Shown: positions 23,001 to 43,098 of the stretch, piece after piece
Layout: the number at the start of each line of letters is the position of its first letter
How positions within the stretch are numbered: the first letter of the stretch is position 1
NCBI GenBank assembly: GCA_964187785.1
Contig: OZ076415.1
Span: 56,544,001-56,608,000, forward strand
Direction: 5' to 3'
DNA: 64,000 nt
Source: Amphiscolops sp. MND2022
Lineage: Eukaryota
The notes under the pieces: generated by a model
Database searches by the model: none
Seen by the model: the letters and a program-made list of their open reading frames with translations, nothing else
Told to the model about the DNA's origin: nothing
Position numbers and translations under genes: made by a program

Positions 23001-23384
23001 GAATTTGGATGATGTTACCCCAATATGTGTCCACGCATTGCCTATTCCCTTCCCAGTGACTGTTCTTACCCTTTCATGAAACTCTTGAAATAAATTATAA
23101 GTTGTATTTCACTTTAATGTCTGCGAATTTTTATAGGTGACAAAAGGAGTGCTTTTTCTGTTGAAAAATGGGCGCTAGAAAGTCATGTAGAATTCTATGA
23201 AAGTAACCTCACAAAATAGGCCCTGCGAGGCCCAGTTATAATCTTTGTTTTATGCTACAACCACCATTACCATCAACGTTCGATGCTAAAAACATCTGAA
23301 TTAAGTATACACTTCTGTCATTTTCATTATCATTGTGTCAGTTAACACCACCTTATTACTGAAACGAGCAATCACTTCTCCATC

Positions 23385-23749
23385 TGTCATGAGGTTGGTC
23401 CGAGCGGTGGACTATGAATTTTATAAAGAACATTTTGTATCGCTTTTATACTTCAGATTTAGCCTGGGTTATTTTCCTTTACTCAGAGTGAATAAAGTTT
23501 TGTTGAAGAAATCAGTTTTAATGTTGAAGAGAAACTGAAGAGAAGTTACAACTGAGAAATATAATTTACAAGTTAAAGCGAGTGTTCTTAATCTTGAGAA
23601 AGTTATCGTCTTCTGTTCTTGTGTTTGACCACTTCGTTGTATCGTCGTCCATCTCGGTGTTGTCAGCCTCTGATTGGTCCACAACTGTTATTGGCTAAAT
23701 ACATTCTGTCATCGAATTTTTGTAATTGTATCATGATTGTATCATGACA
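23385..23749 (-). repeat. 3' LTR of the 14.1-kb provirus (365 bp)
   Basis: By eye differs from the other LTR by 4 substitutions and one 2-bp indel (about 98-99% identical). Confidence 0.95.
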
Positions 23750-23761
23750 CTCCCCACTTTT
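23750..23761 (-). promoter_or_regulatory. Polypurine tract
   Basis: Minus strand AAAAGTGGGGAG immediately before the 3' LTR. Confidence 0.8.
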
Positions 23762-24795
23762 AAGAAAAAGGGGAACTGCCGGGTTGCAGTCCATTTCAGA
23801 GCGGAGATGGTGAAGTGGCATGAAACAAAAGAACTCAATGAATCCGTGAAACCAAGAAGAGCCAACACAAATGCCCGAAGGAAAAAAAGTGAAAGAATAC
23901 ATATGACATAAAGGGGGGGGGGCTCGAAAAGAAGAAAAAAGAAAAGAGCATGTGAAGCATGCAATGCAGAAAAGGTTAATCAAGAAGTTACAAGGGGTAC
24001 TTGTATGAAGAGAAGTCAGCAAATCAGCAAACAGTGAATCATTATTGACAGAGTGAAGCAGAGAAAGAGCAACTGTGTTTGTTCACAAAACTTCTGCTCG
24101 AGAGGGCACGTGGCGACGTGTGCCAAGTGTAAGCTATGGTATTTGCTGAGCAAGAAAACGGGCTGCGAGAGTCGCAGATAAGGCTAGAGGGGCCTTGTTA
24201 ATGATTAACAGTGCAAAGAAGAAATAACAGAGGACGGAAACTTTTATTATGACAGCAATCAGCTAATCTGTTTATAACAAACACGGAGAGAAATGTACAA
24301 CAGAACCAAAGCGGAAAGTGTACAATGTTGCAAGAAGGTAAATATATTGATAGTGGATGTGGAGAACAGAGTAAGCAAAAAGAAGGGGCCGGAGTCAACT
24401 ACAAAGTAATGACTCAAAAGCAAAAGGCAATGTAAGATACATTGAAGATATAATCGGACAAAGTGTCAACCGAAGATTATGGAGAAAAATAGCGCACAAT
24501 TATCCAAAGATATATGAGAAATGCGGGTATTGATGAATGATGAACAGAACTGCATAGACGACATCAAAAGGAAAGGGTTACAATATCAGAGTAACCGAGC
24601 ACATAATGTATTGAAAAAAAGGCATGGTGTTAGAATCCGACTGTGAAGCAGTCAGAGACTGTTAGAGTGGAGCGGTTAAAGTTACTAACAGAGTAACATG
24701 TAAGTACAAGAGAACAGTACTGAAAAGAAAACACACTGCACTCAAGAGTCCAAAAGGACGGGCAAAATGGCGCTATCAGAGAACGCCTTAAAGAA

Positions 24796-27018
24796 TCAGA
24801 GAGGGAGGGTTGTATATCGTGGATCATCATTTGGATGTCGTGTAAGAAGGCAACGACCCTGCCAACGGAAGTTGGGGTCGTTTTGTATAACATTCATGTG
24901 CTCTGTCGGGACAGATAGCACGGGTTTCAATGGTATTTTATGCGTCGTTTTATCTTTATCTTTGTAAACGTATTTGAATGGCATGAATTTATGTAGATTG
25001 TTACAACGATGAAAAATATACATGAATAACAAGTGTACCAACATAGAGATTATAAAACTTGCTATGCCCATTATTAGCCTAAGGGTTGTTGTAAAAGGAG
25101 TGACGTGGCTAAGTTCTCGTCGAAAAGGGTTTTTTAAAGCAGTCATTTGCATGACAATTGGTTCAGCGAGTTTCTGAAGCGCTTCTCGATCTTGGAGGGA
25201 TGTTGGAGGGATGTATTTTAATTCCTTTTTCAGGGAACGTAAAAATGCCAGGTTTGCTGAAGATTTGGTGCTGAAGGATGGAAGTTCGTCAATTGAAGGA
25301 AGAACACTCAGCACATTATGGAGAGGATCGGGAAGATCCACATGGATTTTGATTGAGGGCACACGCGAACAAGATTACAAATCAGAGCGGATGAAGATAT
25401 TGGGTCCACGCAGTTGGTGACCACATGGTAACGTATAGATACAAATTCGACATCCTGGGTATGTTCGTGTGGACAAGTGAGCGGTGTCATTACTGGCTGA
25501 TTCACGGAGTTCAAAGTCAGCATCAGCGGAGAGTATTAGCCATATGCCAAATTTAAGGTTAATCGCTCTCTCAATGATGGGCAACTGGTAAGGTATCAAG
25601 TCACAGACTTTCATAGCCTTGACAAGATTGCCAAAGAAAAGAAGAGACAGGCATGAAGAACCTGAACCTTCAGTTGCAAATCCTTGTTGGCAAATACTGT
25701 AACGGGACGACCCTATGCATTGGTCCAATTGTTAACGAGACACACTGGCAGTCTCGCGACCATCTTCAGAGACGGCGAGAAAATCTGCATTTGTATCCCA
25801 TATCATTGCCATGTCATCGTCATGTTGGGGCATGGGCAGAGGTATAGCTTCATATGTCGTGAGGACCGTCTGACGCGAAGCCAAAGGTATAGACATTGTT
25901 ATGAGTAGTCCTTCAGGCAAAGCGACAATGTCTTGTAGGAGCTGAGATTCGTAATATGACAATGTCTCCTGAAAAGGAATTGCCAAAGTGAGACGGTCTC
26001 GGGCTTTATTTTGGATATTCTGTACAATCGTGAGGACTTTTTCCAGTGACGGGCGGTCGAGAAGTGACATCGGTACAAACTTGTTCAAGAGAGCCGGAAG
26101 GCTGTTCAAGAGGTTGAGGCGATACGCGAACAGCGCAGCACGATATGATTTCACATTCGAATAAAAGAGAGAAAGAAGTGACGCCACGGTATCAAAATTG
26201 AAGTTCATCTGTTGACGAGTAAACAACAGCTGATCACAGTTTCTCATTCTGTGAATATCATCTTGAAAGGCTTCAAATTGAGCGGTTATCGTCTGCCAGT
26301 TGGCATTCTGGATGTCAACCATCTGCTGTTGAAGGTCTCTAATCGCTTGTAATTCTTTGCCTACAACAAAGAATTTCTCATTCGTAGAGGATTGAATATG
26401 TTGCAGATTCTCAGCAAGCGATTCTGTCATCTGAAACATGCGATTGATAGCATCAGAATTCTCCCGGGATTGACAGGTGCCGAAGATACCTGACAAACCA
26501 CAATCGCCAGAGCCCATGGCAATACCGGTGCCAAAAAGTCCAATTGCTCCAACAGCGGCTGCTGCTAGAGGCAGGGCTCTGCGTGGGCGATCAGCTTGTG
26601 GGGTGCTGGGAGATGGAGGCGGCAAAAAGGCAGCGATTTCGTGTTGGAGAACCAAGAGGGCTTGTTCAGAAGCAGTGACTTCTTTTTGTACTTCGGAAAG
26701 AAGCCAGTTGATATCAAATCCTTGCATTGATGTATTAGTGAAATTCAAATAACAGTTGAAGGTGGGCATGTTCCACATGGAGTCCAAGATAGTGAGAAGA
26801 TGCTTGAGATCAGATTTGATGGAGACGTCGAACTGAGGGAAGGGAAGGAGAAATTCCACATTAATAAACTTTTCAGCAAGCAATATTTTTTTGTTCTCAT
26901 GGAAGATGATGCCTTTTTTCAAAGGACCATCTGAATCGTCGAAAGCAGCAATCGGCGATTGAGTGATGCCCAAATATGGAAAGAAGAGAAACAAAAGGAA
27001 TATGCAAATCCCAATCAT
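24796..27018 (-). pseudogene. env: Envelope glycoprotein, class I F-type fusion protein, 740 codons with two in-frame stops (25732-25734, 25375-25377)
   Basis: Signal peptide MIGICIFLLFLFFPYLGITQS; furin-like site RPRR followed by fusion peptide ALPLAAAAVGAIGLFGTGIAMG; heptad-rich helices; Cys-rich ectodomain; TM LIMGIASFIISMLVHLLFMYIF. ORFs 27030-25732, 25728-25375 and 25362-24796 share one frame. Splice acceptor ttttgccctgcag lies just before the ATG. Confidence 0.88.
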
Positions 27019-27487
27019 TCTGCAGGGCAAAATACGATGGGACGGTGATCTTGATATTTATTGGTATGTGGAGAACTTTGATTTGTAACAATATGATATT
27101 TCGAATAGAAAGAGCAAGTTTGTGAAAAGAAAATATCAAAGTTGAAATTCTTTTGTTCGAGTAGGTGGTGTGATCACAAGAAAGATTCAAAAGTCGAATG
27201 ATCGAACAAAAATGGAAATAGTACGATAGGAGTGTGAACAAATGCGTAGTTTGCTATTTAAACAGGATATTTGAGAAGTTTTATCGAATCTTCGAGAAGT
27301 AAGACCAAGTTTCGTATTGGAGTGTGTGAATTATTCGTTTAATAACTAGTCGTCTTGTTTGAGTCTCATTGTTTCTACTTTGTTGATCATCAACAATTTT
27401 ACCAACTAAATCTTCAGTCTACTGCTAATATCTAACGTAAGTCTATCATGTTTATTCGAGTGCTTCAGAGTCAAGTTTTTGTCAAAA

Positions 27488-27787
27488 ATGAATTGCCCAA
27501 AGGCAAGTTTCGAGGGTTTCACCCTGTGGTGTTGTCCGGAGGGGACCTATGCCGCAAGAGGGGGTCGACTCCTCTCCTTTAGTAAGAATCCCCATCCCGA
27601 GTGTGCCCCGCCAGTCGCGACAATGACAGAGGACACAGGGGAAAGTTCTGTCGGTTTGTGGGTGAGTCTGACGTTGTCAGTACTCCTCGCTGTTTTTGTC
27701 TTTTTGTGTTGCCGGGCATGCCGAAAGCAACAAGAGTTTGAAGTAGAAGAAGAAAGAAATACAAAGAGAAAAAAGAGTGGCCTATAA
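27488..27787 (+). CDS. 99-aa single-pass membrane protein (FAST-like layout), antisense accessory ORF of the provirus
   Basis: Intact ORF: Cys-containing N-terminal segment, TM VGLWVSLTLSVLLAVFVFL, CC motif, basic RACRK and KRKK. Upstream candidate 32-nt UTR intron gtaagt...cttcag (27437-27468). Confidence 0.65.
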   Translation: MNCPKASFEGFTLWCCPEGTYAARGGRLLSFSKNPHPECAPPVATMTEDTGESSVGLWVSLTLSVLLAVFVFLCCRACRKQQEFEVEEERNTKRKKSGL

Positions 27788-28251
27788 AAGAAAAGAAAAA
27801 TAAGAAAAAATCAGTTGGCTCAAGAGCTAAAAAAGAATTCGAGCGAAAACAAAAAGAAAGAAAAATGAAGAAGAAGAACTAGAAGGTAGAAGAAAAGAGA
27901 AGAAACAGAGAAAAAAAAGAAAAAAAACCAAAAAAAATGAAACTGTAGATACAAACAAAACGGAGAAGAAAAAAAAAGGAAGAAAAAAGAAAAAAAAGGA
28001 AAGTGAAACAGAAAGAAATTGTGTGTTTGTAAAACTAGATATCGGTACTATATTTATGTAAAGTGTGCTGATACATAAGTACATAGAAAAAGAGGAATAG
28101 AAAAATAGAGGCCAGAAAAAAAAGAAAAAGCAAACAAAAAAATCATAGTAAAGAAAGTAAAAATGAAAAGAGAGAGAAAAGAGAATTTTGGCTGCAACAT
28201 CTTTTGTATATGTCGAACAGTTGAAGTGAGAAGTGAGTAGCAGTGAACAGA

Positions 28252-29586
28252 ATGGTAGTTGGGTATGGTCTAACAAAATCGTTGGTTTTTATTTCAGATT
28301 ATCATCATGGAACGATTTTTACACGAAGCGATCTGAAGGAAGGAGTGCTCGATACGTCAGTTCTAAAGACGTCGGAGAAGAGAGAGAACTTCAAGAAGGT
28401 GTGTCGCAGTCTGAAGGTGGAGAATGGTGTGCTTATGTACAAGGGGAGAAGAAACCAGTTCTTGCCAGTTCCAAATCCTGAACAGGTGGACAATCTACTG
28501 TACAAAGTGCACATCAAGAAATGGAAGGAAGGCGAGAGTGATGTCGGAAAGAAGCACTACCGGGGGGTACAGCTTCACATCGACGCTTTATCTGACGCCG
28601 GGTGGGCTTATCCAGCATCACTAGGAGGCCTGAAGGCGCTAGCAGAGGAGTAATTAATGTTTGACATTATTGTTATATGTATATATAGTAGGCAGTGTCC
28701 TTCTTGAAATGTAATGTGTGCAATATGCCAAAAAGAAATAGGTATATGAAAGAAAACGTAGAGTATACATGTAGAAGTGTTAACAGGTTCTTGCATAATT
28801 GCCAAACCTGCTATTTCGAGAGCGAAGAAGGAAAGCGGACACAGTGGTATCTGCCTGTGTCGTTGAAGCGGAGAGTCGAACTTTGCGAAAAGTTCGGCTT
28901 TACATGTGTCTGGGAACCGATCAGTGGGATAGAGACCACTACTTCAGCAATGGTTTTGGATGCTCCAAAACGGAAGGAGCCATTGGGCGAGCTAGCTGAA
29001 GTAGGAGGCGAGTGCTTCTTCTCCAGTATATACTATTTACTGGTCGGGCGGAAATCAGGTATTTAAGGCGATATCTGTGTAAAAATAAAAAAAAAAGGTT
29101 ATATCGAAATAATCTTTGTATATAGAACGTAAGAACAGTGCACCGAGTCGGAAGTGCAAGGGGCTACGTGTGGCAGCTACTGAGGCAATGCAGACTGCCG
29201 AATTCAAAGAGTACTGCCGCACTTGTCTGGGCACGGCTCCGAACGATTTCCTAGCACAGGAGTGTGCAAAAGTGACTGCAAGCATTTCCGAAGCAGCAGT
29301 AAGGGGCTGGTATTTGCCTGGTAATATGAATAGTCACTCTAGGAAAACGATGGGCTGTTAGAAAACAAGAGAGTACTTTCAGATCTTAGCGACTGCCTGG
29401 GTACTGCAGACGGACCTCAATGTGTACTGGCAGTATTGGAATATGGGCGGCTGGATCCGGTACAAATACGGACCAGAAAGCAATGGGCGAGGAGGCAGCT
29501 TCTTGTGCCAAGCCATCCAGGGCGGTGAGAGGTTCAGAACTCGCTTTCATTGCGAACCGTTGCCCGATTTTCCAGAGCCAGAGTAA
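28252..29586 (+). CDS. Spliced antisense accessory gene, HHCC-like zinc module plus OTU-like cysteine protease, ~380 aa: join 28252-28650, 28692-29058, 29126-29298, 29383-29586
   Basis: Introns 2 (29059-29125) and 3 (29299-29382) are GT-AG and phase-consistent. They join EVGGECFFSSIYYLLVGRKSE...LRVAATEAM to EAAILATAWVLQTDLNVY...RFHCEPL, the OTU Cys and His motifs. Intron 1 needs a one-base correction; the start codon is uncertain. Confidence 0.75.
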
Positions 29587-30526
29587 GTAATAACTAAATT
29601 ACATAGAGAATCAGTAAGCAATCCAAGGGTATTTTGTGAAAATAAGCATATTATTATTAGGTTACGAACATCAGTGAGGGTACGAGGGCCTGTAGTGGAT
29701 CCCTGGGAGGAGGAGGGAGAACAGGGAGCCTGTGGGAGTAGTTCTGCACAACCGTAGAGGTTAGAAAATACACATTTATTGTGAAAAAAACTAAAAAGGT
29801 CAAAAAAGAGCAAGTTCTTTACATGTTTTTTGGGTGAAAAACCTGGAAAGGTTCTAGGCAATGGGTGTATTTATGCAGAGGGATATCGTATAGAGCTATT
29901 AGAGGGGTTTTGCAACCATTCCGGGCGCAAAAATGATAGAAAAAGACATAAAATTGTCGAAAAATGCAATATGTGATAGGAAGGCCAAAAAGTCCCCCAG
30001 AAAAACTTTTAAATTTTTTTTTCGATTTTTCCAATTTTTTTGCTTAGATCGAAAGTTTGGGGTAAAAAACTGGGTTCACCGATATTCCGGGGTCAAAATT
30101 TCGAAAATTCAGTTTTTCATGGGTCTTTGAAAGTCGCATTTTTCAGGGGTCAAAAAAAGTACAACTTTTTCTGAAAAACGGTTATCTAAAAGTGGTTAGT
30201 TGGGAACCCAAGCACGTGTAAATATCACCTAGGTGGCGCTAGGAATCCCATGGTGAGAATGGGGTACCATATGGGTATATAGAAGAGGACTATGATACAT
30301 TTTTTGTCAAAAAACGGTCGAAAAATAGCGATTTTTCGAAAAAATTCAAAATTTTCGTCGAAAAAAATCTATGAAAGGAGGGTAATGCGGAGTGCTAGGT
30401 GGGTTAAATGGAAGCTGGGGAGAAGCCAAAAGGTAGTAGGAAGTGAAAAAAAAGTAGTTGGGAAAATAGAGATTTTTTCCAGAATCATAGAAAAAATGAT
30501 ACAAAAAATGAGAAAAAAGAATGATT

Positions 30527-33500
30527 TCATTTCCAAGGTTTGGAATGAAAAAAGGATGTACGGCTCGGTTTGGGTCGTAAACGGGTGTCACGACGATTAG
30601 ATGAAGCGGTGGTGGTGATCGTAACAGTGGATGGGGTATTAGGCGTATGCGTGTTACGAAAACCAGTAGTTGGAACAGTGTGATTTCGAATAAAGGCAGC
30701 TAGATCTGTGGTATGTAACACAGGAGTGGTTGATGGGCGGTATACCGGAATGCCTTGTGAAAAAGGAGAAGTGGTAGGGGGGTTTATTGTCGTAGAGGGT
30801 GGGGTGGTAAGGGTAGGAGTAGTAGGACGCGGAATGCGTGATGAGGGTGGGCGAATATAATATGGTTTAGCATTAGGGTGACTTGGATATGTGGGAGTAT
30901 TATAAAGGTCAAATAGAGGTGTTACGTTCGATCGAGGATTAGTAGAAGGTGGCGAGGCAATGGCTCGTGCTCGATTTACAAGCGTTTCTGAAAATCCTGA
31001 AAACGAAGAGGATGAGGAACTCTCATGACCGGGTGTATATATCGGTATACGTTCAGAATGGTGAGAGTCCAAACCTGATGGTTCCAAGTCCAAGGTTGGC
31101 ATTGGTTTATGGGTTAAACCAGGAGGGCTAGGAAAATGGGAAGGTGAGGTATGACTCGAAATAGGGGTAGAATGCATTAAAGGTGGGTGACGAGGAGAAG
31201 AGGTAATAGTCGTTACTATACCAGAAGTCGGCTGTGCGACAGTAAAAATATCGTCAGAAGTGAATGTTGTATCTGGGGTGGGAAAAAACGTAGAATGGGG
31301 CATATTTACTGATGAAAATGGTATTCCTGAGAAGGAGGAAGCGAGAAATGAACGGTGGTGTTGATCTTGAAGAGGTACAGTCGAGGGATCAAGCCGAGCT
31401 TGATAAAAAACAGGTGGGAGATCAACATGATGTTCTGCTTGTGGGAAGTCACGGTCAGGGAGGACTTCAGGTTGAGGTAAGGCATGTGAAGGCTGCGGTA
31501 GACCCAAAGGGAGTACCAGGAGAGCCTGCGGTGCCGGTGGGGCCGGTTGTGGCGCCAGTGGCACACGGCGTGGAACAATGAAATACGACGGCAGGCGTAT
31601 CATCAACTTCGTCCGCCGTGGTAAAGGTTCGATCAGTCAAGAGGTCTGGAAGAGCCTGGTCAAAAAGAGCAGGTTCTGAGACATGTCGGGTAGATGGGTC
31701 AGGAACAAAATTAGACTGGCTAACATTATCAAGGTCTTCGACTGTATATTGTGGGGTGATTGGACGAAGTCGAATTCGGTGTACACATTGGGTGTAATTG
31801 GTGCCTACCTTTCGAACGATGTAATTTGAGTTCGTTAGTACAGATTCAACTCTGTACAGAGGGAGCCATTTAGTTAGGGATTTTCCCATATGGTCATTGG
31901 TATTGGAAAGTTTCGGATTTAAAAGTAAACAAAAGGCATGTTTTTTCAAAGAGGCAGCTGACGCTTTTGTCGTAAAAATGCCGATATTTGTTATAGGCGG
32001 TAATTGTAGCATCACGTGCTAGAGAAAACACTTCGTTCATTTTATCTTGGAGAGTACTTGTAAATTCATAACGTGTTTCAAGAGTTTGTAGTAGTTTATT
32101 GTCAAACCGTAGATCAAGTTGTGAATGTGGTTGTCGACCATGAAATAAAAATGTTGGAGTGCATCCAATTGATGCATGGTTTGCCGTATTATGTACAAAC
32201 ACGACGAGATCTACGTATAGGTGCCAATCACGTTTAATCTTGTTTTCATATATGCCAAGATATTGTTTAAGAGACGCATGAGAGCGCTCGACGGACCCTA
32301 CAGTTTGTGGGTGTTTGACAGTGGCATATTCCAGTTTGATTTCGAGTAAGCGACTCAGTTCAGTCATGACACGGGAAGTGAATGCTGTTCCCATGTCTGA
32401 AAGAACAACTTTTGGTATATAGGCGGATCTCATAAAAATGTGAGATAACTGTTTTGCAACATTCGGGGCGCTAGCGTTGCGCAGAAGAGTCGCAAAAAGA
32501 TATTTACTAAAGGTGTCTTTAGCTGTGAGAATGTGCGTATACCCAGTGGAATCTGGTAGTTTACCTACGAGATCTACTTGAAGCATATCACCTGGGTAGT
32601 ATTTGTCAGTCGCAAGGGACAAAAGTGGTGTTTTCAACGTTTGGTGTTTAACGGATTTGATTTGGAGACAAGAGCTACAGTTTTTTACGTAGTTAGCTAA
32701 AAATTCGACAAAACCAGGGAAATAAAAATGTTTACGAAAGAGTTCTGCTGTTTTAGCAATGCCTGGGTGGCCTGCAAACTTGCTATTATGTACTCGATAG
32801 AGAACTTCATTTCGCAAATGTTTGGGTACAACATATTGGCGAATAAAATTTCTGCCAGTATCATCAAAAAATTTACGATATAAGATACCATGGTGGTTTT
32901 CTAATCGGTCAAAATGTTTGAGATACTTCCGAAGTTCTGTGCTCATGTAAGGAAAATCAGAAGGCGGGCCTGTTTCTAACCATGATAATACTAGTCTAAT
33001 AGTGTTATCTTTCTGTTGTTCCGCACGCAAATTTACGGGTGTTAGTTTATCAGTAAGGTCCAAATCATCCAAAGGGTTTGGAGAATGGAGGGCGTTAATT
33101 TCGGGAAAAGAGTCACGAAGACTTTTCGAAAGATGGAACGTTTCACAGTCAAATTTGAAAGAATTTACAGAGTTATCAGGGACCTGCATGCCCATATGGA
33201 GGTGGACATCAGCTACAGGTATTTTAGAATTAAAGCGGAGTTCGAGTTTAGTGTGTGGTTGGATATGAATTCTAGACAGATAATCTGCCGCTGCATTTGC
33301 TTTTCCTGGTATATGACCAAGGACAAAATTATAATTCAAAACGTGATCCACACACGTCCAAAGACTTGACGGGATTGTTTTAGCTTGGAAAAATCTAGTT
33401 AGACTTTTATTATCGGTAAGAACTAACACTGGTTTAGAACTTCCCCATAAAATGTGTGCAAACGTGTCAAATGCAAAGTGCACGGCTAAAAATTCCTTAG

Positions 33501-35779
33501 CATAAATGGACAGCTTTAAATAGGTTTGGGGTGAAGATCTTAGAACCAAACGAGACTGGTACATAAGTCTTGTGAGTTTTGCCTGTTTGATCAATGGAAT
33601 AGTCTTCAATTAAGAGGACATATCCAGCTGCGTAGAAACTAGCATCAGTCAAGATTACATACTGTGCATCTGGTTTAGGGAGACGAAGCGACATTTGACA
33701 TGCTTGTTCAAGATCTTTTCGTAAAGTAGTGATACTTTTTTGGTGTTCTTCTGTTAAAACGATGTCTGATTTTTTTCGTAGCAATTGAGAGAAGGGTAGC
33801 AGTTTTTCACCAAGTTTGGGAATAAATGAACGAAAATACTGGAAAAAACCAATAAATCTTCGAATCTGCCTTACGGTTTTAGGAGGTTTCAGAGTGGCTA
33901 AAAAATCTGTTACTTTCGTTTTATTGGGAGACATTCCTTCGCTTGTAATCGTATTTCCCAAAAATTTCATTTCTTTTAGACCAAATTCGCATTTACTGGG
34001 TGTAAGTCTTAGACCTGTCTTTTGTACACATTGAAAGATGGCTTCTAAGTTGACAATAAATTCTTCAAAAGTTTTGGCTGCAGTGCCTAGATCATCAACA
34101 TATTGAAAGCACTGGTCGGCAACTATACAGGGGTATAGGTATTTTCGCATGAAAGAACTAAAGGCGCTAACTGAGCGGCTTAGTCCTTGAGCTAAGCGCA
34201 AATATGCGAATGTCCTTGAAAGAAAATTGAATGCCAGCAGTTGCACTGACAGTGGGTCGGCCATTTGCAGGACATGATACGCTTGACTGCAATCCAATTT
34301 AGCAAAATATTTCTTACCTGCGAGATGCGCATTTACATCTGCCAATGTTGCTATAGGGAAATTGTGATTATCGTAATCATGCCTGATTAAATGATTGATT
34401 CGTCTGAGGTCTACTAAAATTCGCAATTTACCCGAGGGTTTACGGACGGCAAAATTGGACTTGAGTACTTAGAGTACGTCAAGGTTGTTATCACTCCCCA
34501 ATATTGCAAAAGTGCCAATTCCACTAGAACTTCATCGCGGTAGTGAATCGGGGTCGGTGGACCTTGGGTATACATCGGCTTGTCATTTTCAGGAGTAAGT
34601 TTCACTTTAAATTCTTCATTTGCTCCAATGTCTAAGCGATGTCTTGCGAAAATTTGGTGATATTTTAAAAGTAACGTTTCAACAATGTTAATCTGTTCGG
34701 CGTTAAAAACAGTTTTCCCACGTAAATTGTGATAGAAATTTCTTTCGGTCTTCTAATTTTTTGTCTGGGTCTAGTTTTTCGCGTGCTTTTAGAGCAACGA
34801 TCTCGTCATAAATTCTTTTGTGAATTCCTGTGAGGTTTTCTGGGTCTTTGCAATTTTCCGGTGTAGGAAACCAAAACTCATCTGTTGATGGGTATACTTT
34901 GGTTTCAGAGTCTTCAATGAGACCATTAATGCTTTTAGTTCAATGGTCAAAGAAAAGTTCAGGATTGATAGGATGCAAGTACTGAGCTTGCTTGGCTGTC
35001 AAGATTGTTACTTTTGCAACAGGAACATTTTTTGTAACTGTTACTTTGTATGGCAAAATATTAAGTATCCCAAGGGAAACTTGTTTTTGGTTATTCAGTT
35101 TGACAATTGCGCTGGTGACGCAAAGTCCTGTTTGTTTTTCAAACCGCGGATTCGGTTCTACAATAGCTACTGTTCCTTCAGGAAAGGATTCAGCGGAAAG
35201 AGAACAAGTGATTATTTCGGATGTATTCGGTTGTACCGAATAGTTTTGGATAGAGTGTAAGAAAAGATTTTTCTTTGGAGTAAGCGAACTTACTTTTCCG
35301 TCTTTATGTATCCGTTCGGTCAATTGTAAAGTCATATTGGGTAGTTTAAGCGTTCTTGTTTTCGGGTGGATAGAAATATCATTTTTCTCGAAAAATGGTA
35401 ATCCCAAAATTGTCTGGTTCATGGTTTGCATTAGAATAAAAGTTTCAGTGAAAGATTCACCTGCAATTTTAAAAGAAGCTCGAAAAGTACCATAGGTGGT
35501 TACAGAGTCACCATTTGCCACTTTTACAGAGCTAGTTGCTGGATTATAGTTTGTTATAGCTTTTGGACAAAGACGTTGAAGTTTTTGGAATATGGTTATG
35601 GGCATGGCGCTTGAGAAAGCACCTGTATCAATTAAAGCTTTGACTGGAAAAGAAAAATTAAGTGGTACAGAGAAAAGTGAAGTGCGAGGCTTTGAGGAAA
35701 GGATGTTTATAGATGAAGAAGAGTTAGTCATATTAGTAGATAAAGAAGGAGAAATATGGGCAATGTGTGGCTTACTTAG
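30527..35779 (-). pseudogene. pol: pol: protease, dUTPase-like insert, RT, RNase H, integrase, long Pro/Ser/Thr-rich tail; several frameshifts
   Basis: PR ALIDTGAF; RT LVDLRRIN, KLDCSQAY, YVDDL; RH LTDASFYAAG, YAKEFLAVHFA, LTDNKSL; INT HNSKFAGHPG...CSSC, QVDLVG, LSDMGTAF, VERSH. Confidence 0.93.
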
Positions 35780-36964
35780 TTTTTTGGATTGGAGGCTTGT
35801 TGATTTGCATCATAGTGGGGTGTCCAGTATGTAGGCATTTGAGTGGTGGCTACCATCGACTGAGGCGGCATCATGGGTTGCTGGACTGTGAAGTTCTGCG
35901 CAGAGTACGGTGTATAGGGTAGAGCTGGAGGATGATGTTGTGGACGAAACCAACATTGAGAAAGTATATGGCCAAACTTGTTGCAATAATTGCAATACTT
36001 TTGGCTTGATTGAGCAGTATTTCGCTGTTGATTCCAATTGGGTCTCTGATTTTGCCAATTAGGGTTTGGTGGTCGCCAATTCTGTTGGTTGTTATTGTTT
36101 CTCCAGTTCTGCTGGTTGTTTTTCCAATTCTGAGGGTTGTTTCCACGAGGGCCATTGTTTTTGTTCCAGTTTTGTTGCTTGTTTTTGTTGTAGTTGTTGT
36201 TTTTGTTGTTGTTGTTATTGTTATTGTTTGTAGACTGAGCCGTAGTTAGCTGATTGATAGTAGGTTGCAAGGTTTTAGTCAATTCCTGCAATTCGGTGGA
36301 CAGCTTTCCAGTTTCTTGCTTGAGAACATCTTGTGCTTTTGACAGCTCATGTAAGGAGATCTTTTGTGGAGAAATCCCGAAGTTCATTGAAAGCGGTATC
36401 GTCATCTTCCGGGTAAAGACGATCAACAATCATACGGCTAGAAGCTTTCGCACATAACTCCTCAATCGGGGTTTCATCTGGTTGTGTCATTAAAAAGCGT
36501 TTGAGTTTGATAGTCTCTCTCTCACTCGTCGTGTTCTTTCTTGAGCACGATCTTCTGCTACTACTGCTGGTCTTCCTGCTCCGGCGGCTCTTGCTGCTAC
36601 GTTGGGGTAGGCTTCCAAAGCCAATCGTTGCAGCTCAGTGAGGAAATCTTGAGCGCTTTCCTCAGAGGCTTTCATTTTGCGGGAGTTGAAAAGCAACTTT
36701 TGAAGCTGGATTCTCTGGTCGTTTTGATATCTGTCACGTAGGGCTGCTACTGCTTGATCGTAGTTATCTCGAATTGCTGCAGGTTGTTGGTCGAAGAATG
36801 TGAGTGCACCTCCTTTTAGATGAAGGTGTAGGTATCGGTGTCTCTCACCGTTAGGTACAGCAGCAACTTGGATACAACTTTCAAGTTGTCGTAGAAATTC
36901 GTTAAGGATTTTTTTCTGTGCCTTTGAAAGGCTGTAGGTTAACGAAAGGTTGAATAGCGGCCAT
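35776..36964 (-). pseudogene. gag: gag (capsid-like domain, Asn/Gln/Trp-rich linker, CCHC knuckle); frameshifted
   Basis: ATG at 36964 (MAAIQPFVNLQPFKG), then LHLHLKGGALTFFDQ...ESAQDFLTELQRLALEAYP and knuckle CNYCNKFGHILSQC. Frameshifts near 36915 and 36500. Confidence 0.85.
35779..35785 (-). promoter_or_regulatory. -1 ribosomal frameshift slippery heptamer A AAA AAC at the gag/pol junction
   Basis: The heptamer is in the gag frame directly before the gag TAA. The -1 frame is open and is 16 codons in frame with the pol ORF at 35731. Confidence 0.7.
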
Positions 36965-37141
36965 TTGAAAATTTTGTGAAGGGAAATTTAATCATGAAGA
37001 GAGTATGTAGAATCAAACTTTTCTATGGTATTTCAGGCAAAATTTTGTAGGATTATCAACTGGAATCGATGAACATAGCTATGTTTTAATCAGCAGTGAT
37101 TGTGTTTCAGTTGTTCAGGAAGGAGGCTGAGTGAACAGGAA

Positions 37142-37159
37142 AAGAGACTCCTGTCACCA
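37142..37159 (-). promoter_or_regulatory. Primer-binding site
   Basis: TGGTGACAGGAGTCTCTT directly after the 5' LTR. Begins like a tRNA-Trp-type PBS; primer identity not verified. Confidence 0.75.
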
Positions 37160-37526
37160 TGTCATGAGGTTGGTCCGAGCGGTGGACTATGAATTTTATA
37201 AAGAACATTTTGTATCGCTTTTATACTTCAGATTTAGCCTGGGTTATTTTCCTTTACTCAGAGTGAATAAAGTTTTGTTGAAGAAATCAGTTTTAATGTT
37301 GAAGAGAAACTGAAGAGAAGCAACAATTGAGAAATATAATTTACAACAGTTAAAGCGAGTGTTCTTAATCTTGAGAAAGTTATCGTCTTCTGTTCTTGTG
37401 TTTCACCACTTCGTTGTATCGTCGTCCATCTCGGTGTTGTCAGCCTCTGATTGGTCCACAACTGTTATTGGCTAAATACATTCTGTCATCGAATTTTTGT
37501 AATTGTATCATGATTGTATCATGACA
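37160..37526 (-). repeat. 5' LTR of the 14.1-kb provirus (367 bp)
   Basis: Direct repeat of 23385-23749. Minus strand has two CCAAT boxes, a TCAGTT initiator-like motif and ATTAAA. Confidence 0.95.
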
Positions 37527-40478
37527 CCATCTCATTGCCACAACAATTGACCATTATTGGAGAAATCTTGGACTACAAACAGTTATTTGAACAGAAAAAT
37601 ACAACTACTAAGAGCATAAGACTTCACATTTTTAAGTGAATGCAGGCGCAGCTTTCTGCGTACGAGTGGTCGTCCGCTCCATCTCAAAAGCGCTGCTACG
37701 AGAATTAAACTAGCTGAAGACTGCTTAGGCTAAGACTTGTAATGGCCACGACATGGAACGATAGAAGTATGGAAAAAAAGATTCAGAAAAAATTGCAGGA
37801 ATTTTCCATTGATTCGAAATTCTTTGTCGTCCTTCTTTCGACAATTTCCATATACTCCGCCAGAGTTTAACCGAAAAAAAACGAAATGTACAGTGCTTAG
37901 GGCAGTGATTACAGTCCTGCGATAAAAGAATAAAATCCGTTATTGGAACGTTTGGAACACTCCACTTTTTCGCTAATAGCTCAATCTATTCAACATCAGC
38001 GGAAATGCCTCAACTGAAAGTTATTCAAAATTCAATTTTGTTTACCTTCATGCTTTTTTGGAGCTTCTATGACAAATATTACGGAATTTAGCCTATTTCA
38101 CCTATTTATGTATTATGATTAAGACTTGGTTTACAGTCTAAGTTCTTGATTTTCGTGTATTTCAGAAAATTTTAATTGTTTTTTTTTATTTTTGTAATAG
38201 TTTGTTATTGACTATTGATTGCACTGTGAAAGTTTGAGGTCCTTGATGTTCATAGATCCGAAAACTGCCGTGCTCCAATGAAAAACTTCCGGTGCATGTT
38301 TCAGAGTCGGGTAAAGACCTCGAAATTGTGGTAGTCTTTTTACATGTGAACAATCAAGAGCTCAAAATTCTCGAGTGTATTTAGTCAATGTGAATATCTT
38401 GAACAATGGCTAGCTTCTGCTGTCAATGTAAACTCTGAAAGTGGATTTCCAATATATTACTTAAAAACATTCCAAAATTGAAGGAGTGAAAATTACCATA
38501 CAGCAATTTAATTCTTCTATTACTGGACTGTGGGGCATTCGGCTTGTACTGGGGCAGTATCAGGTTCGGATCTCTTTCCCTTCATCATTTTTGGACCTCA
38601 AGCCCTTCATCCCTGGCTTTTTCGTTGTATGGTCACGAAAAAAAAAACAGTTGAGACAACAAATTCGAGTCGACTATTGCTTAGCCATTGAGCTGCAAGC
38701 AAGGTACAATAGCTTGCTATGGGAATATGGTATCCGAAAACGGCGCCGATTCACAAAAACTTACTTGGTTATTCGTCGTCCCTCCCTCGAAATTGGGGAA
38801 ATAAATTTTTATCAATGACATGTCAAAGACATGATATTGGGATAAAGGTTTGTAGAACCAGACTATGATTACGCTGAATAAAATTATACCAACAAATAAA
38901 ATCAGCTGTTTCATGAAACCCGCATGAAATATTCAGTTCAAAGTATAATTGGTAGTGATAACGGAGACACGAAATAGCTTTGATTAAAAAGCAAAGCTTT
39001 TATTTACTTGAAAAAAAATTTTTTGACATGGAATCAATTACGTACAGCACAATAGTAGTTTCCACATAAATTTTGTACACATTCAGTAAATATTAAGTAA
39101 CTATCTATTTGTCAACCGTGTCAAAATAAAGTTACACCGTGCGACTAAATAGTCAAAATGAGTGACGCGAAAGTTCACATATTCCATCTCGAGAAAATGC
39201 GTCACATGAGTCGACAAGAAGAGAGCCATTATGATTGATTCATTTGCAAAGATGTTAAGTTAAGCAGTAAACTTACACACAAAATTTTTTTCGAAGCATT
39301 TACAAAAAAAACATTTACAAGCTCAGGGATTGGCAGATTTGACTATTTCAAGAGAATCAATCTTTCAAACTGTCTCAAAAAGAACAGATAATTTTGAGGG
39401 CAAATTTCGAAGTCTAATGTCTAAAATTTTCGATGCCAAGAAAAAATTCAAAAAACATTCACTAACAGAAGCAAAACGCTCTGCACTCGACCGAGGAACT
39501 GTTTTCTCGACAATTTATTGCTTGTTAGAGAAATTGACATAGCCAAAAAGTTGGCTCAGAAAGGCTTTTGGATAGACTTATCTCTCAAAACTTTTGAAGG
39601 ACAATATTTCTCAGGAATTCAAACTTTTGATTCAACTTTCATAAAAATTGTTAAACTTTGTTAAAAATAAATAATAAATGAACTATTATAATTTCATTTG
39701 AGAGAAACTCCGTGAAGCAATTCGAATAAAACCAAATTTTAAACTCGCAGAAAAACACTATTGGCGTTTTCTCTAAACAAAAAAGTTCGGAAATTGACCC
39801 TACTTAAATCATCTGATCTAAAGGTGGCTTTTGGAGGAAACGAATACACAAAAAATACAAAGAAAAAAAATTTTGCAGAACGAACCTACGATTTGCCCGC
39901 CAAAATTGTCTTCAAAAACTTCGGTTGAATTTACATAACACGAGTTTTGACCATGCTTCGTATGAAGGGAAGTTGGAACTTTCAGAGGAACGCTCTTCGA
40001 ATCCGAAAACAAGTCCGAAATTCCGCTCTTCGAATCCGAAAACAAGTCCGATATTCCTAGTCACAAAAATGCCTGAATATCGCCAAACTTAACAGTGGCT
40101 CTCTTCCAAAAAATAGGCACTTGCAGGGCACAGTATTATTTCTGCTTTAGGCTTTCATGTTCAATAATAGAAGCATATCTGGAATAACTCAACACTCCAG
40201 TTTAATCAACGCAACAAAAAAGTAACGTTTTTCGACCGACTACTAAGAGCTCAAGCGAAAGTTCGAGTTTCATTCTATTTCACACTGCAACAAACTCAGA
40301 ACAATTGGATTTCGGCAGAATTTTCAATTTAGGAAGAATAAGTTCCATGAAAACATTTTGAATTGATAATGTCTGGGAACAGGCAAATAAAATCGAATGA
40401 ACATAAATTGAAGCCACTTCACTACAAGTAAGAAAAAGAATAACATGGATAATCATCTCGGAGAAAGTAGTACAGTTT

Positions 40479-43098
40479 TCATGCGACTCCGCTGAGAATT
40501 ACAATGATAAGATGATCTTCGAGGGCTTCCGCATCGATGATTTTGGGCGCTACCTTCTTGAGATCTTCGGTGAAAAACTTACAGGGTGGGAATGCATGTA
40601 ACACGCCCATGTTTTCACTGGATCCGATGGGCAATCCAATGACTCCAGCAGAATGCTTTGACTTTAAATACGAGACTAAATTCTTGAATTGTCTGGGGGC
40701 AGTTTGGGAAGGAAGTTCTTTGCCTCCTGAGTTGTCATTGTTCTGCGTGGCGAGTAGCAGGCAGAACCCGTCACTTGTTGCACTTTCCATGCGCCTTCGC
40801 ACTTCTTCCAGTTTTCCGGGTTCACATCGCAGGCGTTGGGTAATCTTGAGAGCGGTGGCTGGATCACCAGTGGGAGATTCAATCAGCAGCTTTTTGCACA
40901 CTTCACGGCTGCCGCTGAGCAAGGACATATGAGTACTGAACGCACTGTTTTTCAGAATGAGATGTCCTTTCCAGCAGCTTTCCAGAACCATTGCCAAACT
41001 TGTTATATCCAAAGACTCCCTTGCGATGCTCATTGGACTGGGTGACCGATGACGTTTATTTCTTGGCTCATCGTCTTTCTTTTCGTAACCACCTTTGCCC
41101 GTTCTTCTGTCAAAACTACCAGCGCGAGATCTCTTCTTGTCAGCCCTGAACTCATTCTCGGGACTGCGTCTATTGCTCCTCCCATAGGGCGGACTTCTAG
41201 ACCTGTCCCGGTGGTCTCCTTTGCCATGGAAAGACGACGTACCGTTATAATTGCGATCCCGATCATTATCATACTTTCCTCTGTTTGAGCTGGAAAAATT
41301 ACCACCTCCGCCTGATTTGTCTTCTTTCCTGGAATAAGAGTCCCGGTGGGGTGACCTTTCACGTGTTTCATTGGGATGACCTTTACCGGAATAACCGCGT
41401 TTGCCACCCGCATTGTCATGATCATAGCGCCCAGTGTTTCTACCACTGCCCGAAGAATACTCATCTCGGTAACCACCGTCGCCTCGGCTATCGCGACCAG
41501 GAGGAGCTCTGGACATGGGAGGGGAGACTTCTTCTCCCAGAGAAGGAGCCGCTTTGGCCGCCGCATTTGTCTTGGTTATGCGCATATGATAATTCATAGC
41601 AGATACTTGGTCATACTCCACGTAATCAAATCTGGCTCGAGAGTCACTACCACAGATATGGCGCCCAGTTAAAGCCTTTATAGCCGTTTTAGCGCCTTCT
41701 GATGAGCTATACACGATGTAGGCAAAATTCTCTCCTTTGGAATAATCTATTTTCTTGATATCTCCAAACCTGTCGAACTCATTCTCCAAAGCTGCTAAAC
41801 TAGTCTGCTTGCCCAATCCGCCAACCCAAATGCAAGAGGACTCAGGAGAACTACCGTAAGTAATTTTGCATGGCTTGCTGGATCGACCTCCAATCTGCTT
41901 ACCTTGCATGCCTTTCTTGCCCTTTTCAGCTTCGTCGGGATTGAGAAATGCGATGCAAGCAAACGCAGGGCCGTCTCTTGGATACTTCATATCAATGCTC
42001 ATCACACTAGCATAACGCTGGAATTCTGCGTACAAATCTTGTTCGTTCAAATTGGGATCCAGATCACTCACAAACAGCATTCTTGAAGGAGGATCAACAG
42101 ATTCGACCTTGGGTTTGCGGGGCTCGTAATACACTTCTCTCTCGCTTCTCGAGTTGTAGTTGTCAAAATCTCCACGGTTGGAATGAACAGGTGCTTCAGG
42201 TGATCTGTGTCGAGATCCGTCTCTCTTGGTAACAACAGCTGACTTAGGGCCCTCTTTGTAACGCTAAAACAAAGAATGGAGCAACTAGAAATGGTCGCTG
42301 AGAAAACCCAAGAAACTTTTTTTCAAAGAAAAAGATCTAAATTATATCTTAAATAAGTCAGAACATTGTAACATTTGTCCAATTTGTACGTTCAGCAATG
42401 GACAGTACCCTCTCTATTTCTCCGCTTGAATGCTCAAACAGTAAGCATCAAAACGCAGCAATACAATGATTGAATTTAATCAGCGGTCAAGTTTAGACAA
42501 AATGAAAGATGTTGGTAATCGGATTGGTGGCACCAAAGTTCTGGCCACAACAAGCAAGCACACGATAAGAATAACAATGGAAAAAGTGCTTGCAATAAGT
42601 CAACAAGCAATTTTTTAAGTACAGATTTTTAAAGTTCATTCGGTACGCCCGATCTCTAAAAACTAGCTCTAAAAATATCCATGTGCTGCTTCTTACCTGA
42701 CTGGGAGACCGCGATTTGGATCTTTTGCGATCTCTGTCTCGAGGGTCCACAGGCAGCACGCCTTTGATAACAGGCTCCAATGGAAGAGACCGATCAAACA
42801 CATGCACTTTGCGCATCTTCTCAAGAGCCACTCGAGCGTCATTCTCTTGTGTAAAGTTGATGTAACAAATTTTTTCTCCAGCAACCATGGCCAGTTTCAC
42901 GTTATGCTCATCGAATTTGCGGAAAACTTTTTCAATAGTCTCGATAATGACGTGATCTTTCACACCACGAGGCCACCCGCCTTTGATGCATAGAGAACGG
43001 AAGTTAGAAACTCTGTCAGGCCGTGATAATCTATCTCGAGCAGGTATCCTTTCGACATCTGGGCTCCTCCGGCGATCATTTCGGTTGTTGAAAGGCAT
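40479..43098 (-). CDS. RBM15: RNA-binding motif protein 15 / Spenito (SPEN family: 3 RRMs + SPOC), join 43098-42697, 42263-40479, 728 aa
   Basis: RRM1 in exon 1 (KICYINF); RRM2 SRMLFVSDLD...EFQRYA; RRM3 SSCIWVGGLG...LENEFDRFGDI; SPOC CWKGHLILKNSAF...LKITQRLRCE...LVSYLKSKHSAGVI...LHAFPPCKF. Canonical phase-0 intron CAG|gtaaga...ttttag. Confidence 0.93.

What the first reader, a model, noticed from the sequence alone, without database searches (positions are those of the whole stretch)
28252..29586. Intron-containing OTU-like deubiquitinase gene inside an LTR retroelement
Seen: short introns (42, 67, 84 nt) on the strand opposite gag-pol. Splicing introns 2 and 3 at canonical sites joins EVGGECFFSSIYYLLVG (Cys motif), LRVAATEAM, EAAILATAWVLQTDLNVY and RFHCEPL (His motif). 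Intron 1 works if one G is restored. Established: OTU proteases use GxGxC...H motifs; viral OTUs (nairovirus, arterivirus) remove ubiquitin/ISG15 to blunt host defence; animal Helitrons carry OTU domains. Inference: a captured deubiquitinase serving as an anti-restriction or anti-silencing factor. The Asp usually three residues before the Cys is Gly here, so activity is uncertain.
Basis: partly seen in the sequence, partly recalled or inferred. Interest (0 to 1): 0.85.

Follow-up and report, generated by a model that had tools for sequence, protein, structure and literature searches.

The report
Spliced antisense gene inside endogenous retrovirus
A real, intron-containing gene sits backwards inside a family of envelope-carrying gypsy-like retroelements and is under strong purifying selection; it joins an integrase-like zinc-finger head to a conserved Cys-His domain, but the claimed OTU deubiquitinase identity could not be confirmed.

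Summary
The window holds a 14,142-bp LTR element (23385-37526, 5-bp target duplication) with gag-pol and an F-type env-like ORF on the minus strand. On the plus strand lies a five-exon gene (28307-29757).

- **Introns:** Intron 1 is 137 nt (28650-28786), not 42 nt, and needs no restored base. A fourth intron and a fifth exon follow.
- **Damage:** This window copy has a 10-nt deletion after codon 8.
- **Conservation:** Eight further element copies and one copy outside any element carry the gene, from three ENA assemblies, at about 50-70% protein identity. Intron positions and phases match, and dN/dS is 0.07-0.10.
- **Intact copies:** Three copies give intact proteins of 355-363 aa.
- **Domains:** The N-terminal half resembles an integrase HHCC domain, on weak evidence. 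The C-terminal half has an invariant Cys and His.
- **OTU tests:** Pfam, PDB profiles, a 1.84-billion-protein profile search and a partial AlphaFold model gave no OTU match.

The whole spliced domain could not be submitted to any tool, so OTU membership stays untested. My best reading is a selected antisense accessory gene, probably a thiol hydrolase.

The parts
23380..23384 (.). target-site duplication CCATC (left)
   Evidence: The same 5 bases follow the right LTR at 37527-37531.
23385..23749 (-). 3' LTR of the element (TG..CA ends), with a purine-rich tract just inside it
   Evidence: Direct repeat 98-99% identical to 37160-37526.
24847..27030 (-). ORF3, F-type envelope-like gene, broken in this copy
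   Evidence: tblastn to intact ORF3 of L004 and L003 gives 54-57% identity. The intact 737-aa L004 form has a signal peptide, an R-S-K-R site, a Gly/Ala-rich fusion-peptide-like segment and a C-terminal TM segment. There is no Pfam hit.
27488..27787 (+). small conserved plus-strand ORF: Cys-rich ectodomain, TM segment and basic tail
   Evidence: Homologous ORFs lie at the same place in L001-L006 and L008. A donor-like site at 27437 and an acceptor at 27468 lie upstream.
28298..28649 (+). exon 1: acceptor AG at 28296-97, start ATG at 28307-09, 10-nt deletion relative to other copies at about 28330/28331, His codons of the HHCC-like motif at 28510 and 28555 or 28576
   Evidence: The ATG and an acceptor 5-13 nt upstream are conserved in 9 copies. 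The deletion is shown against L001 and L002.
28650..28786 (+). intron 1 (137 nt, phase 2, GT..AG)
   Evidence: The donor GA|GTRRGT is conserved. The in-frame acceptor is conserved in all lineages, and lengths range from 69 to 137 nt.
28787..29058 (+). exon 2: C-x2-C of the HHCC-like motif (28800, 28809) and the invariant L-A-E-x-G-G-x-C motif (Cys 29013-29015)
29059..29125 (+). intron 2 (67 nt, phase 1)
   Evidence: Lengths are 65-99 nt in other copies.
29126..29298 (+). exon 3 (three helices in the partial model, pLDDT about 90)
29299..29382 (+). intron 3 (84 nt, phase 0)
   Evidence: Lengths are 72-84 nt in other copies.
29383..29582 (+). exon 4: invariant F-H-C-E-P motif (His 29548-50, Cys 29551-53, Glu 29554-56)
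   Evidence: This exon is the best conserved, at 61-81% identity between lineages.
   Evidence: Lengths are 71-91 nt in other copies.
29661..29757 (+). exon 5, acidic C-terminal tail; stop TAG at 29755-57, followed by another donor-like GT at 29760
   Evidence: It is in frame and conserved in L001-L005, L007 and L008.
30527..35818 (-). pol (protease, RT, RNase H, integrase with C-terminal extension), split by frameshifts in this copy
   Evidence: Pfam hits to gag-asp_proteas, RVT_1, RT_RNaseH, Integrase_H2C2 and rve. tblastn to the intact 1280-aa L004 pol.
35779..36960 (-). gag
   Evidence: tblastn to L003 gag. A zinc-knuckle-like hit.
37160..37526 (-). 5' LTR, with a primer-binding-site-like TGG... 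immediately inside it (37159 downwards)

Best explanation
This is an accessory gene of an envelope-carrying Ty3/gypsy-type endogenous retrovirus family ('ancient errantivirus'-like).

Shown:
- It lies antisense to gag-pol, between pol and env.
- Because it is antisense, its four coding introns are not removed from the element's genomic RNA, so they are inherited through retrotransposition.

Inferred:
- It is transcribed from inside the element on the plus strand and spliced.
- A conserved acceptor a few bases before the ATG suggests a 5' leader exon or trans-splicing. That leader may be shared with a small membrane-protein ORF upstream.

The protein:
- It is 355-363 aa in intact copies and has two parts.
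- The N-terminal 130 aa or so resemble the N-terminal extension plus HHCC zinc-binding domain of retroelement integrases.
- The C-terminal 200 aa or so carry an invariant Cys, at the start of a predicted helix, and an invariant His-Cys-Glu near the end.

Proposed mechanism (inferred): the integrase-like head brings the protein to the element's integrase or nucleoprotein complex. The Cys-His domain acts as a papain-type thiol hydrolase that removes ubiquitin or a ubiquitin-like modifier, or cuts another target, to the element's benefit.

The copy in this window is probably dead for this gene, because of the 10-nt deletion.
For: Gene reality and selection:
- The five-exon structure has GT..AG at all four introns, with identical positions and phases, in the window, L001-L005, L007 and L008. 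Intron lengths differ by non-multiples of 3.
- L003, L004 and L007 give intact ORFs of 359, 363 and 355 aa.
- dN/dS is 0.07-0.10 over 298 codons between the window and L002, with 77 of 105 differences at third positions.
- dS is saturated while proteins stay 50-70% identical in other pairs.

Part of the element:
- The gene always lies between env-like ORF3 and the 3' end of pol, in lineages whose pol is only 44-80% identical and in three assemblies.
- There are no inverted repeats around it.

Head domain:
- H..H..C-x2-C is colinear with the element's own integrase N-terminus, and hhalign gives P 0.0048.
- The AlphaFold model has a beta-hairpin plus helices, with pLDDT 75-89 over residues 40-110.
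- The highest-probability Foldseek matches are foamy-virus integrase or Pol: rmsd 3.5-4.9 A over 61-95 columns, but E about 0.4-2.4.

C-terminal domain:
- The Cys and His are invariant in all six aligned copies and are also kept in the more divergent members L008, P0053 and P0059.
- The Cys sits at the N-terminus of a predicted helix.

Precedent: Ginger1 transposases fuse a gypsy-like integrase to OTU or Ulp1 proteases and contain introns (PMC2836005).
Against: - No Pfam OTU hit, or any other protease hit, on exon pieces or read-through ORFs.
- No PDB sequence-profile hit.
- Nothing but fragments of this same family came up among 1.84 billion proteins.
- Foldseek on the partial model (mean pLDDT 66) found nothing.
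- The Cys loop reads G-G-E-C rather than the usual OTU D-G-N-C.
- Many other Cys residues are conserved, so a zinc-binding, non-catalytic domain is possible.
- The integrase-like assignment rests on weak statistics. Pfam Integrase_H2C2 does not hit the read-through ORF P0019.
- There is no expression data.
- One intact copy (L007) lies outside any recognisable element, so the gene may also serve the host.
Confidence: 0.45

Rival explanations
1. The protein is a non-catalytic regulator. It would be an integrase N-terminal-domain mimic joined to a Cys/His-rich zinc-binding or protein-binding domain. It would modulate integration, particle assembly or transcription of the element, in the way antisense regulators such as HTLV-1 HBZ act without enzymatic activity.
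For: - No protease profile or fold match in any test run.
- Many conserved Cys residues lie outside the proposed dyad.
- The N-terminus is integrase-like.
Against: - In the most divergent members only one Cys (G-G-x-C), one further Cys and the F-H-C-E-P motif persist in the C-terminal domain. That pattern fits a dyad better than a multi-ligand zinc site.
- A Cys at a helix N-terminus followed by an aromatic residue is typical of papain-like enzymes (the rule comes from my own knowledge).
Confidence: 0.3
2. The C-terminal domain is specifically a member of the OTU deubiquitinase superfamily. On this view it was captured from a host or from a Ginger1/Helitron-type transposon, and it strips ubiquitin or ISG15-like tags to blunt host restriction.
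For: - The order of motifs fits my recollection of OTU domains, which is a lead and not a test: Cys helix, then helices with L-R..A....F..(F/Y)C, then I-S-E-A-A, a helix, four strands and His-x-acid.
- Ginger1 and Helitron precedents exist.
- Pfam OTU also misses the Polinton PolB N-terminal domain of L007. Domains of that class have been called OTU-like from structure prediction. So a Pfam miss is weak evidence.
Against: - All profile and fold tests that could be run were negative.
- There is no similarity to the OTU-like PolB N-terminus in L007 (hhalign P 0.72).
- The conserved Asp before the Cys is absent.
Confidence: 0.3
3. The gene is a passenger: the remnant of a Ginger1-like DNA transposon or a host gene nested in the element. 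On this view it has no role for the element and is merely copied along with it.
For: - An integrase-like head plus a Cys-His tail plus introns recalls an internally deleted Ginger1 transposase.
- An intact copy exists outside any element (L007).
Against: - dN/dS is 0.07-0.10, and intron positions and reading frames are kept across element lineages with saturated dS.
- The location is fixed in all lineages.
- There are no terminal inverted repeats.
- There is no DDE core.
Confidence: 0.07
4. There is no gene: these are chance ORFs with chance GT..AG pairs.
For: None beyond the fact that this window copy is frameshifted near its start.
Against:: conserved exon structure, intact ORFs in three copies, and a strong third-position bias.
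Confidence: 0.01

Closest known systems
Ginger1 DNA-transposon transposases (Bao, Kapitonov and Jurka 2010, PMC2836005)
   Same: - A gypsy-integrase-like N-terminus with an H2C2 zinc finger is fused to a C-terminal cysteine protease domain (OTU or Ulp1).
- The genes are interrupted by 1-4 introns.
- They are found in invertebrate animals.
   Different: - There is no DDE catalytic core or GPY/F module: only about 55 residues separate C-x2-C from the Cys motif.
- There are no terminal inverted repeats.
- The gene is a fixed antisense component of an LTR element, not a transposon of its own.
- The OTU identity is unproven.
OTU proteases of viruses and transposons (nairovirus L, arterivirus nsp2 PLP2, animal Helitron OTU, Polinton/adintovirus PolB N-terminal OTU, PMC8502044)
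   Same: A mobile element or virus carries a Cys-then-His domain that could deconjugate ubiquitin-like modifiers.
   Different: - No profile or structural match was obtained here.
- The Cys loop lacks the Asp.
- The domain is encoded as a separate spliced antisense gene, not as part of a replicase polyprotein.
Antisense genes of retroviruses and LTR retrotransposons (HTLV-1 HBZ; antisense extra ORFs of plant Ty3/gypsy elements). Stated from my own knowledge.
   Same: An accessory protein is encoded on the strand opposite gag-pol and expressed from an internal or 3' promoter. HBZ is also spliced.
   Different: - The gene here has four conserved coding introns.
- Its protein has an integrase-like zinc-finger head and a Cys-His domain, unlike those accessory proteins.
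- It sits between pol and env, next to a second plus-strand ORF.
Env-F-carrying 'ancient errantiviruses' of metazoans (PMC13524379)
   Same: The host element has LTR-gag-pol-env order. Its Env-like protein has a signal peptide, a furin-type site, a fusion peptide and a TM anchor.
   Different: - That survey does not mention antisense ORFs, introns or OTU domains.
- Here about 3.5 kb between pol and env hold two plus-strand genes, which makes a 14-kb element.

Membership tests
OTU deubiquitinase superfamily (Pfam PF02338 and relatives) | Significant sequence-profile match to an OTU model or to solved OTU structures | tested here: inconclusive
   There was no hit for exon pieces, read-through ORFs or exon-wise profiles. 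The contiguous spliced domain could not be submitted, so the test was run on fragments only.
OTU deubiquitinase superfamily (Pfam PF02338 and relatives) | OTU fold with Cys at a helix N-terminus facing a His on the C-terminal sheet | tested here: inconclusive
   A partial model of exons 2-3 puts the Cys at the start of helix 20-33, at pLDDT about 65. Exon 4, which holds the His, is absent from the model. Foldseek against the PDB gave nothing with E below 5.
OTU deubiquitinase superfamily (Pfam PF02338 and relatives) | Cys-loop signature D-G-x-C with a conserved Asp three residues before the Cys (signature recalled from my own knowledge) | tested here: not met
   The family consensus is L-A-E-x-G-G-x-C, with Gly at position -3 in all members.
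OTU deubiquitinase superfamily (Pfam PF02338 and relatives) | Deubiquitinating or Ubl-deconjugating activity | not testable with these tools
   This needs recombinant protein and ubiquitin or Ubl probes.
Integrase N-terminal HHCC zinc-binding domain (Pfam PF17921 / PF02022) | H-x(n)-H-x(about 23-32)-C-x2-C motif, colinear with integrases | tested here: met
   The family has H-x5..14-H-x(about 33)-C-x2-C, aligned colinearly with the element's own integrase. The second spacer is slightly longer than usual.
Integrase N-terminal HHCC zinc-binding domain (Pfam PF17921 / PF02022) | Significant profile or structure match | tested here: inconclusive
   - hhalign against the element's integrase N-terminus gives P 0.0048.
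- Pfam gives no hit on read-through ORF P0019.
- The best-probability Foldseek hits are PFV integrase and foamy-virus Pol, but E is 0.4-2.4.
Ginger1 transposase | DDE (rve) catalytic core and GPY/F module | tested here: not met
   There is no rve hit, and no room for one between the C-x2-C and the Cys motif.
Ginger1 transposase | Terminal inverted repeats flanking the gene | tested here: not met
   Only low-complexity A/T runs were found.
Ty3/gypsy LTR retroelement with env (errantivirus-like): the host element | LTR pair with target duplication, PBS and PPT, gag-PR-RT-RH-IN order, and an env-like third ORF | tested here: met
   The env assignment rests on sequence features, not on a profile hit.

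The most novel reading that the evidence does not exclude
An invertebrate errantivirus-like lineage may have a 'complex retrovirus' genome plan. An internal antisense transcription unit with a shared leader would be spliced alternatively to two accessory genes. One is a small membrane protein. The other is an integrase-head/deubiquitinase fusion that docks on the element's own integrase complex and strips host ubiquitin-type marks. The enzyme would descend from a Ginger1-like transposase that lost its DDE core.
Probability: 0.2. Interest if true: 0.85.

Novelty: new variant of a known kind. Interest (0 to 1): 0.62.

Why it matters
- LTR retroelements of animals are usually described as gag-pol, with or without env.
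- A conserved, multi-intron antisense gene that has been kept through many rounds of retrotransposition shows that these elements can hold accessory genes with their own splicing programme, as complex retroviruses do.
- If the Cys-His domain is a deubiquitinase or another thiol hydrolase tied to an integrase-like targeting head, it would be a testable example of a retroelement manipulating host ubiquitin-type control.
- It would also link LTR elements to the protease-bearing Ginger1 and Helitron transposons.
- A practical point: ORF-based or sense-strand-only TE annotation misses such genes.

Tried and rejected
Rejected: a conserved donor and a 137-nt intron are in frame without any change.
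- **Stop at 29586 as the gene end.** Rejected: it lies inside a conserved donor, and exon 5 follows.
- **ATG 28252 as the start.** Rejected: it is out of frame in the undeleted copies, and the ATG at 28307 is the conserved one.
- **Pfam on exon pieces and read-through ORFs.** No result.
- **PDB profile searches.** No result.
- **Word-index search with P0005.** Only 2 hits.
- **Scans of viral and JGI metagenome contigs.** Nothing found.
- **Rfam and tRNA scans of the window.** Nothing found.
- **A contiguous ORF spanning exons 2-4, to make the whole domain submittable.** None exists among 63 library hits or 10 loci. Introns 2 and 3 read through in frame only singly.
- **Nested DNA transposon.** No TIRs.
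- **Using the Polinton PolB N-terminus in L007 as an OTU reference.** It shows no similarity to the family, and Pfam does not recognise it either.
- **A first alignment for the N-terminal fold.** It mis-placed the exon 1 pieces and was discarded. It was rebuilt as A7.
- **Identifying the host from a neighbouring RBM15-like gene.** The best named orthologues are only about 34% identical, so the host stays unidentified.
- **Bacterial promoter/terminator scan.** Not informative for a eukaryote.
Full report
**The element.**
- The region lies in a 14,142-bp LTR retroelement, window 23385-37526.
- Its two LTRs (23385-23749 and 37160-37526) differ by 4 substitutions and one 2-nt indel. They start with TG and end with CA, and they are flanked by the same 5 bases, CCATC.
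- Inside the right LTR lies a TGG... primer-binding-like site. Inside the left LTR lies a purine-rich tract. The element therefore runs on the minus strand.
- Pfam finds aspartic protease, RT, RNase H, Integrase_H2C2 and rve on minus-strand ORFs between 35731 and 31894, in that order.
- gag (36960-35779) and pol are recognisable but split by frameshifts in this copy.
- Downstream on the same strand, at 27030-24847, is a third ORF. In an intact copy (L004, 737 aa) it has a signal peptide, an R-S-K-R site followed by a Gly/Ala-rich hydrophobic segment, and a C-terminal membrane anchor.
- That is the layout reported for F-type Env proteins of 'ancient errantiviruses' across metazoans (PMC13524379). 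Pfam gives no hit.
- I therefore treat the element as an env-carrying Ty3/gypsy endogenous retrovirus of an animal.

**The observation.**
In four copies the end of exon 1 reads GA|GT(A/G)(A/G)(G/T)T, which is a phase-2 donor at 28650.
- The matching in-frame acceptor is at 28785-86. This gives a 137-nt intron and the junction ...A-L-A-E-E|F-L-H-N-C-Q-T-C....
It is A/T-rich and unalignable in the divergent copy L003. ORF fragments from other copies become similar only from (R)F-L-R-N-C onwards.
- The true start is the ATG at 28307-09, conserved as M-E/D-x-F/Y-L in most copies and more loosely in L008.
- Right after codon 8 the window copy lacks 10 nt that L001, L002 and L003 have, so its frame shifts.
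- At the other end, the 'stop' TAA at 29584-86 is part of a conserved donor, GA|GTAAGT.
- A 78-nt phase-2 intron (29583-29660) leads to a fifth exon (29661-29757). That exon is in frame and conserved in L001-L005, L007 and L008. It ends in a stop a few bases before yet another donor-like GT.

**Is it more than chance?** Yes.
- Searching with exon 2 found 14 ORF fragments, all from ENA assemblies. A profile search of 1.84 billion proteins found 63.
- I fetched ten loci from three assemblies.
- Intron positions and phases are identical wherever the four-intron structure could be read (the window, L001-L005, L007 and L008).
  - Every site is GT..AG.
  - The exceptions are the rearranged L002, whose intron-2 sites are disrupted by an insertion, and the decayed L006, which has lost the intron-2 donor.
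- Intron lengths vary: 69-137, 65-99, 72-84 and 71-91 nt.
- L003, L004 and L007 give intact spliced proteins of 359, 363 and 355 aa. L005 has a single premature stop. L001 (97.5% identical to the window element) has a deletion and two stops in exon 3. L002, L006, L009 and L010 are decayed.
- Proteins of different lineages are 50-71% identical.
- Between the window and L002, dN is 0.04 and dS about 0.5, so dN/dS is 0.07-0.10. Of 105 differences, 77 fall at third codon positions. For more distant pairs dS is saturated.
- The gene always sits between the env-like ORF and the 3' end of pol, on the opposite strand. This holds even in L008, whose pol is only 44% identical, and next to env remnants in two other assemblies.
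- No inverted repeats flank it.
- An antisense gene is the only kind that can keep introns through an RNA-copied life cycle. The conserved introns therefore show it has been carried in this orientation for a long time (inference from established retroelement biology).

**The N-terminal half of the protein.**
- Residues 1 to about 130 show, in this order: a short hairpin motif (G-x-L-x-Y-K), V-P-T-P-E-Q-V, H-x5..14-H, A-L-S-x-A-G-x-x-x-P, G-G-L, then N-C-x-x-C.
- The element's own integrase N-terminus shows the same order.
- Profile-profile alignment of the two gives P 0.0048, with the His and Cys ligands aligned.
- An AlphaFold model of a read-through ORF (P0019, which carries 25 intron-encoded residues) has a beta-hairpin and helices at pLDDT 75-89 for residues 40-110.
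- Its highest-probability Foldseek matches are prototype foamy virus integrase (rmsd 3.5-4.9 A over 61-95 columns) and foamy-virus Pol. All have E above 0.3.
- Pfam Integrase_H2C2 does not hit.
- I rate 'integrase N-terminal-like' at about 0.6.

**The C-terminal half of the protein.**
- It carries the invariant motif L-A-E-x-G-G-x-C-(F/W)-F-S-S, with Cys at 29013-15.
- It also carries F-H-C-E-P, with His at 29548-50. Both are kept in the most divergent members.
- A partial AlphaFold model of exons 2-3 (mean pLDDT 66) puts the Cys at the N-terminus of a helix. It is followed by three confident helices.

**The OTU claim.** I could test it only on fragments.
- The spliced protein has no reference. 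No ORF in any copy spans exons 2-4.
- On fragments, everything was negative:
  - Pfam.
  - PDB profiles of exons 2-3 and of exon 4.
  - The 1.84-billion-protein profile search, which returned only family fragments.
  - Foldseek on the partial model.
- The Asp expected before the Cys is Gly throughout.
- A Polinton PolB next to L007 has an N-terminal region of the class reported as OTU-like (PMC8502044). It shows no similarity to the family. Pfam misses that region too, so a Pfam miss is weak evidence.
- OTU membership is therefore unproven. A papain-type thiol hydrolase remains the most economical reading of an invariant Cys-then-His pair. A non-catalytic Cys/His domain is a serious rival.

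**How it probably works.**
- Shown: a conserved, selected, five-exon antisense gene belongs to the element.
- Inferred: it is expressed from within the element.
  - All nine copies have a pyrimidine tract plus AG 5-13 nt before the ATG.
  - About 850 nt upstream there is a conserved donor (27437), preceded by a TATA-like box near 27250.
  - That donor is followed 32 nt later by an acceptor (27468). The acceptor lies just before a second conserved plus-strand ORF (27488-27787), which encodes a small membrane protein.
  - This suggests one leader spliced alternatively to two accessory genes, or trans-splicing. RNA data are needed.
- Inferred function: the integrase-like head targets the element's integrase complex, and the Cys-His domain acts as a hydrolase on ubiquitin-type or other conjugates.

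**Closest known and novelty.**
- The closest known architecture is the Ginger1 transposase: gypsy-like integrase plus OTU or Ulp1, with introns (PMC2836005).
- This gene lacks the DDE core and the inverted repeats, so it is not a Ginger1 member.
- I found no report of such a gene in LTR elements.

**Host and limits.**
- The host is an unidentified animal. A neighbouring RBM15/spenito-like gene has close relatives only in unlabelled ENA assemblies. Its best named orthologues are about 34% identical.
- No expression data were available.
- The full-length fold and profile tests remain to be done.

Noticed in passing
window 27488-27787 (+); L001 8768-9076, L003 8937-9281, L008 8916-9419: A second conserved plus-strand ORF of about 100 aa lies upstream of the main gene. 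It has a Cys-rich motif (C-C-P-E-G-T-Y..L-L-S-F..H-P-x-C), one TM segment and a basic tail. The L008 version has its own signal peptide. It looks like a small type-I membrane protein.
   Followed up: partly
window 27250-27470 and 28285-28297 (+): A TATA-like box, a conserved GTAAGT donor at 27437 and two acceptors (27468 and 28297) each sit just before an ATG. This suggests a shared leader with alternative splicing, or trans-splicing. It is unverified without RNA data.
   Followed up: partly
window 24847-27030 (-); L004 6229-8442 (-): The element's third ORF has the hallmarks of an F-type viral fusion glycoprotein: signal peptide, furin-type site, fusion peptide and TM anchor. It has no Pfam hit. 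It is broken in the window copy.
   Followed up: partly
L007 9647-11020 (+) and 13740-17630 (-): An intact five-exon copy of the gene lies outside any recognisable env, pol or LTR. About 3 kb from it is a Polinton-type PolB whose N-terminal ORF carries a D-H-N-C-F-L-Y ... H-Y motif. This copy could be a host or donor copy, or a relic.
   Followed up: partly
window 29758-29765 (+) and equivalents in L003, L004, L007: A conserved donor-like site (G|GTRAGAAAA) lies 2-5 nt after the stop codon of exon 5. This hints at a 3'-UTR intron or further exons. No AATAAA was found within 900 nt in the window.
   Followed up: no
L010 2762-8266: About ten tandem repeats, spaced roughly 583 bp apart, of a fragment homologous to residues 47-127 of the env-like protein.
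   Followed up: no
L009 10001-11070: This decayed copy, from another assembly, has in-frame TGA at conserved Trp positions. The stored protein P0071 was translated with TGA read as Trp, and the tool flags that it does not translate to the query.
   Followed up: no
window 40479-42134 (-): A single-exon host gene with RRM and SPOC domains (RBM15/spenito-like). Its best named orthologues are only about 34% identical, so the host is a poorly sampled metazoan lineage.
   Followed up: partly
window 46149-47972 (+) and 54425-59971 (-): Other retroelement remains: an RT-bearing ORF, and a second LTR-type element with Integrase_H2C2, rve and RT in a region of strong negative AT skew.
   Followed up: no
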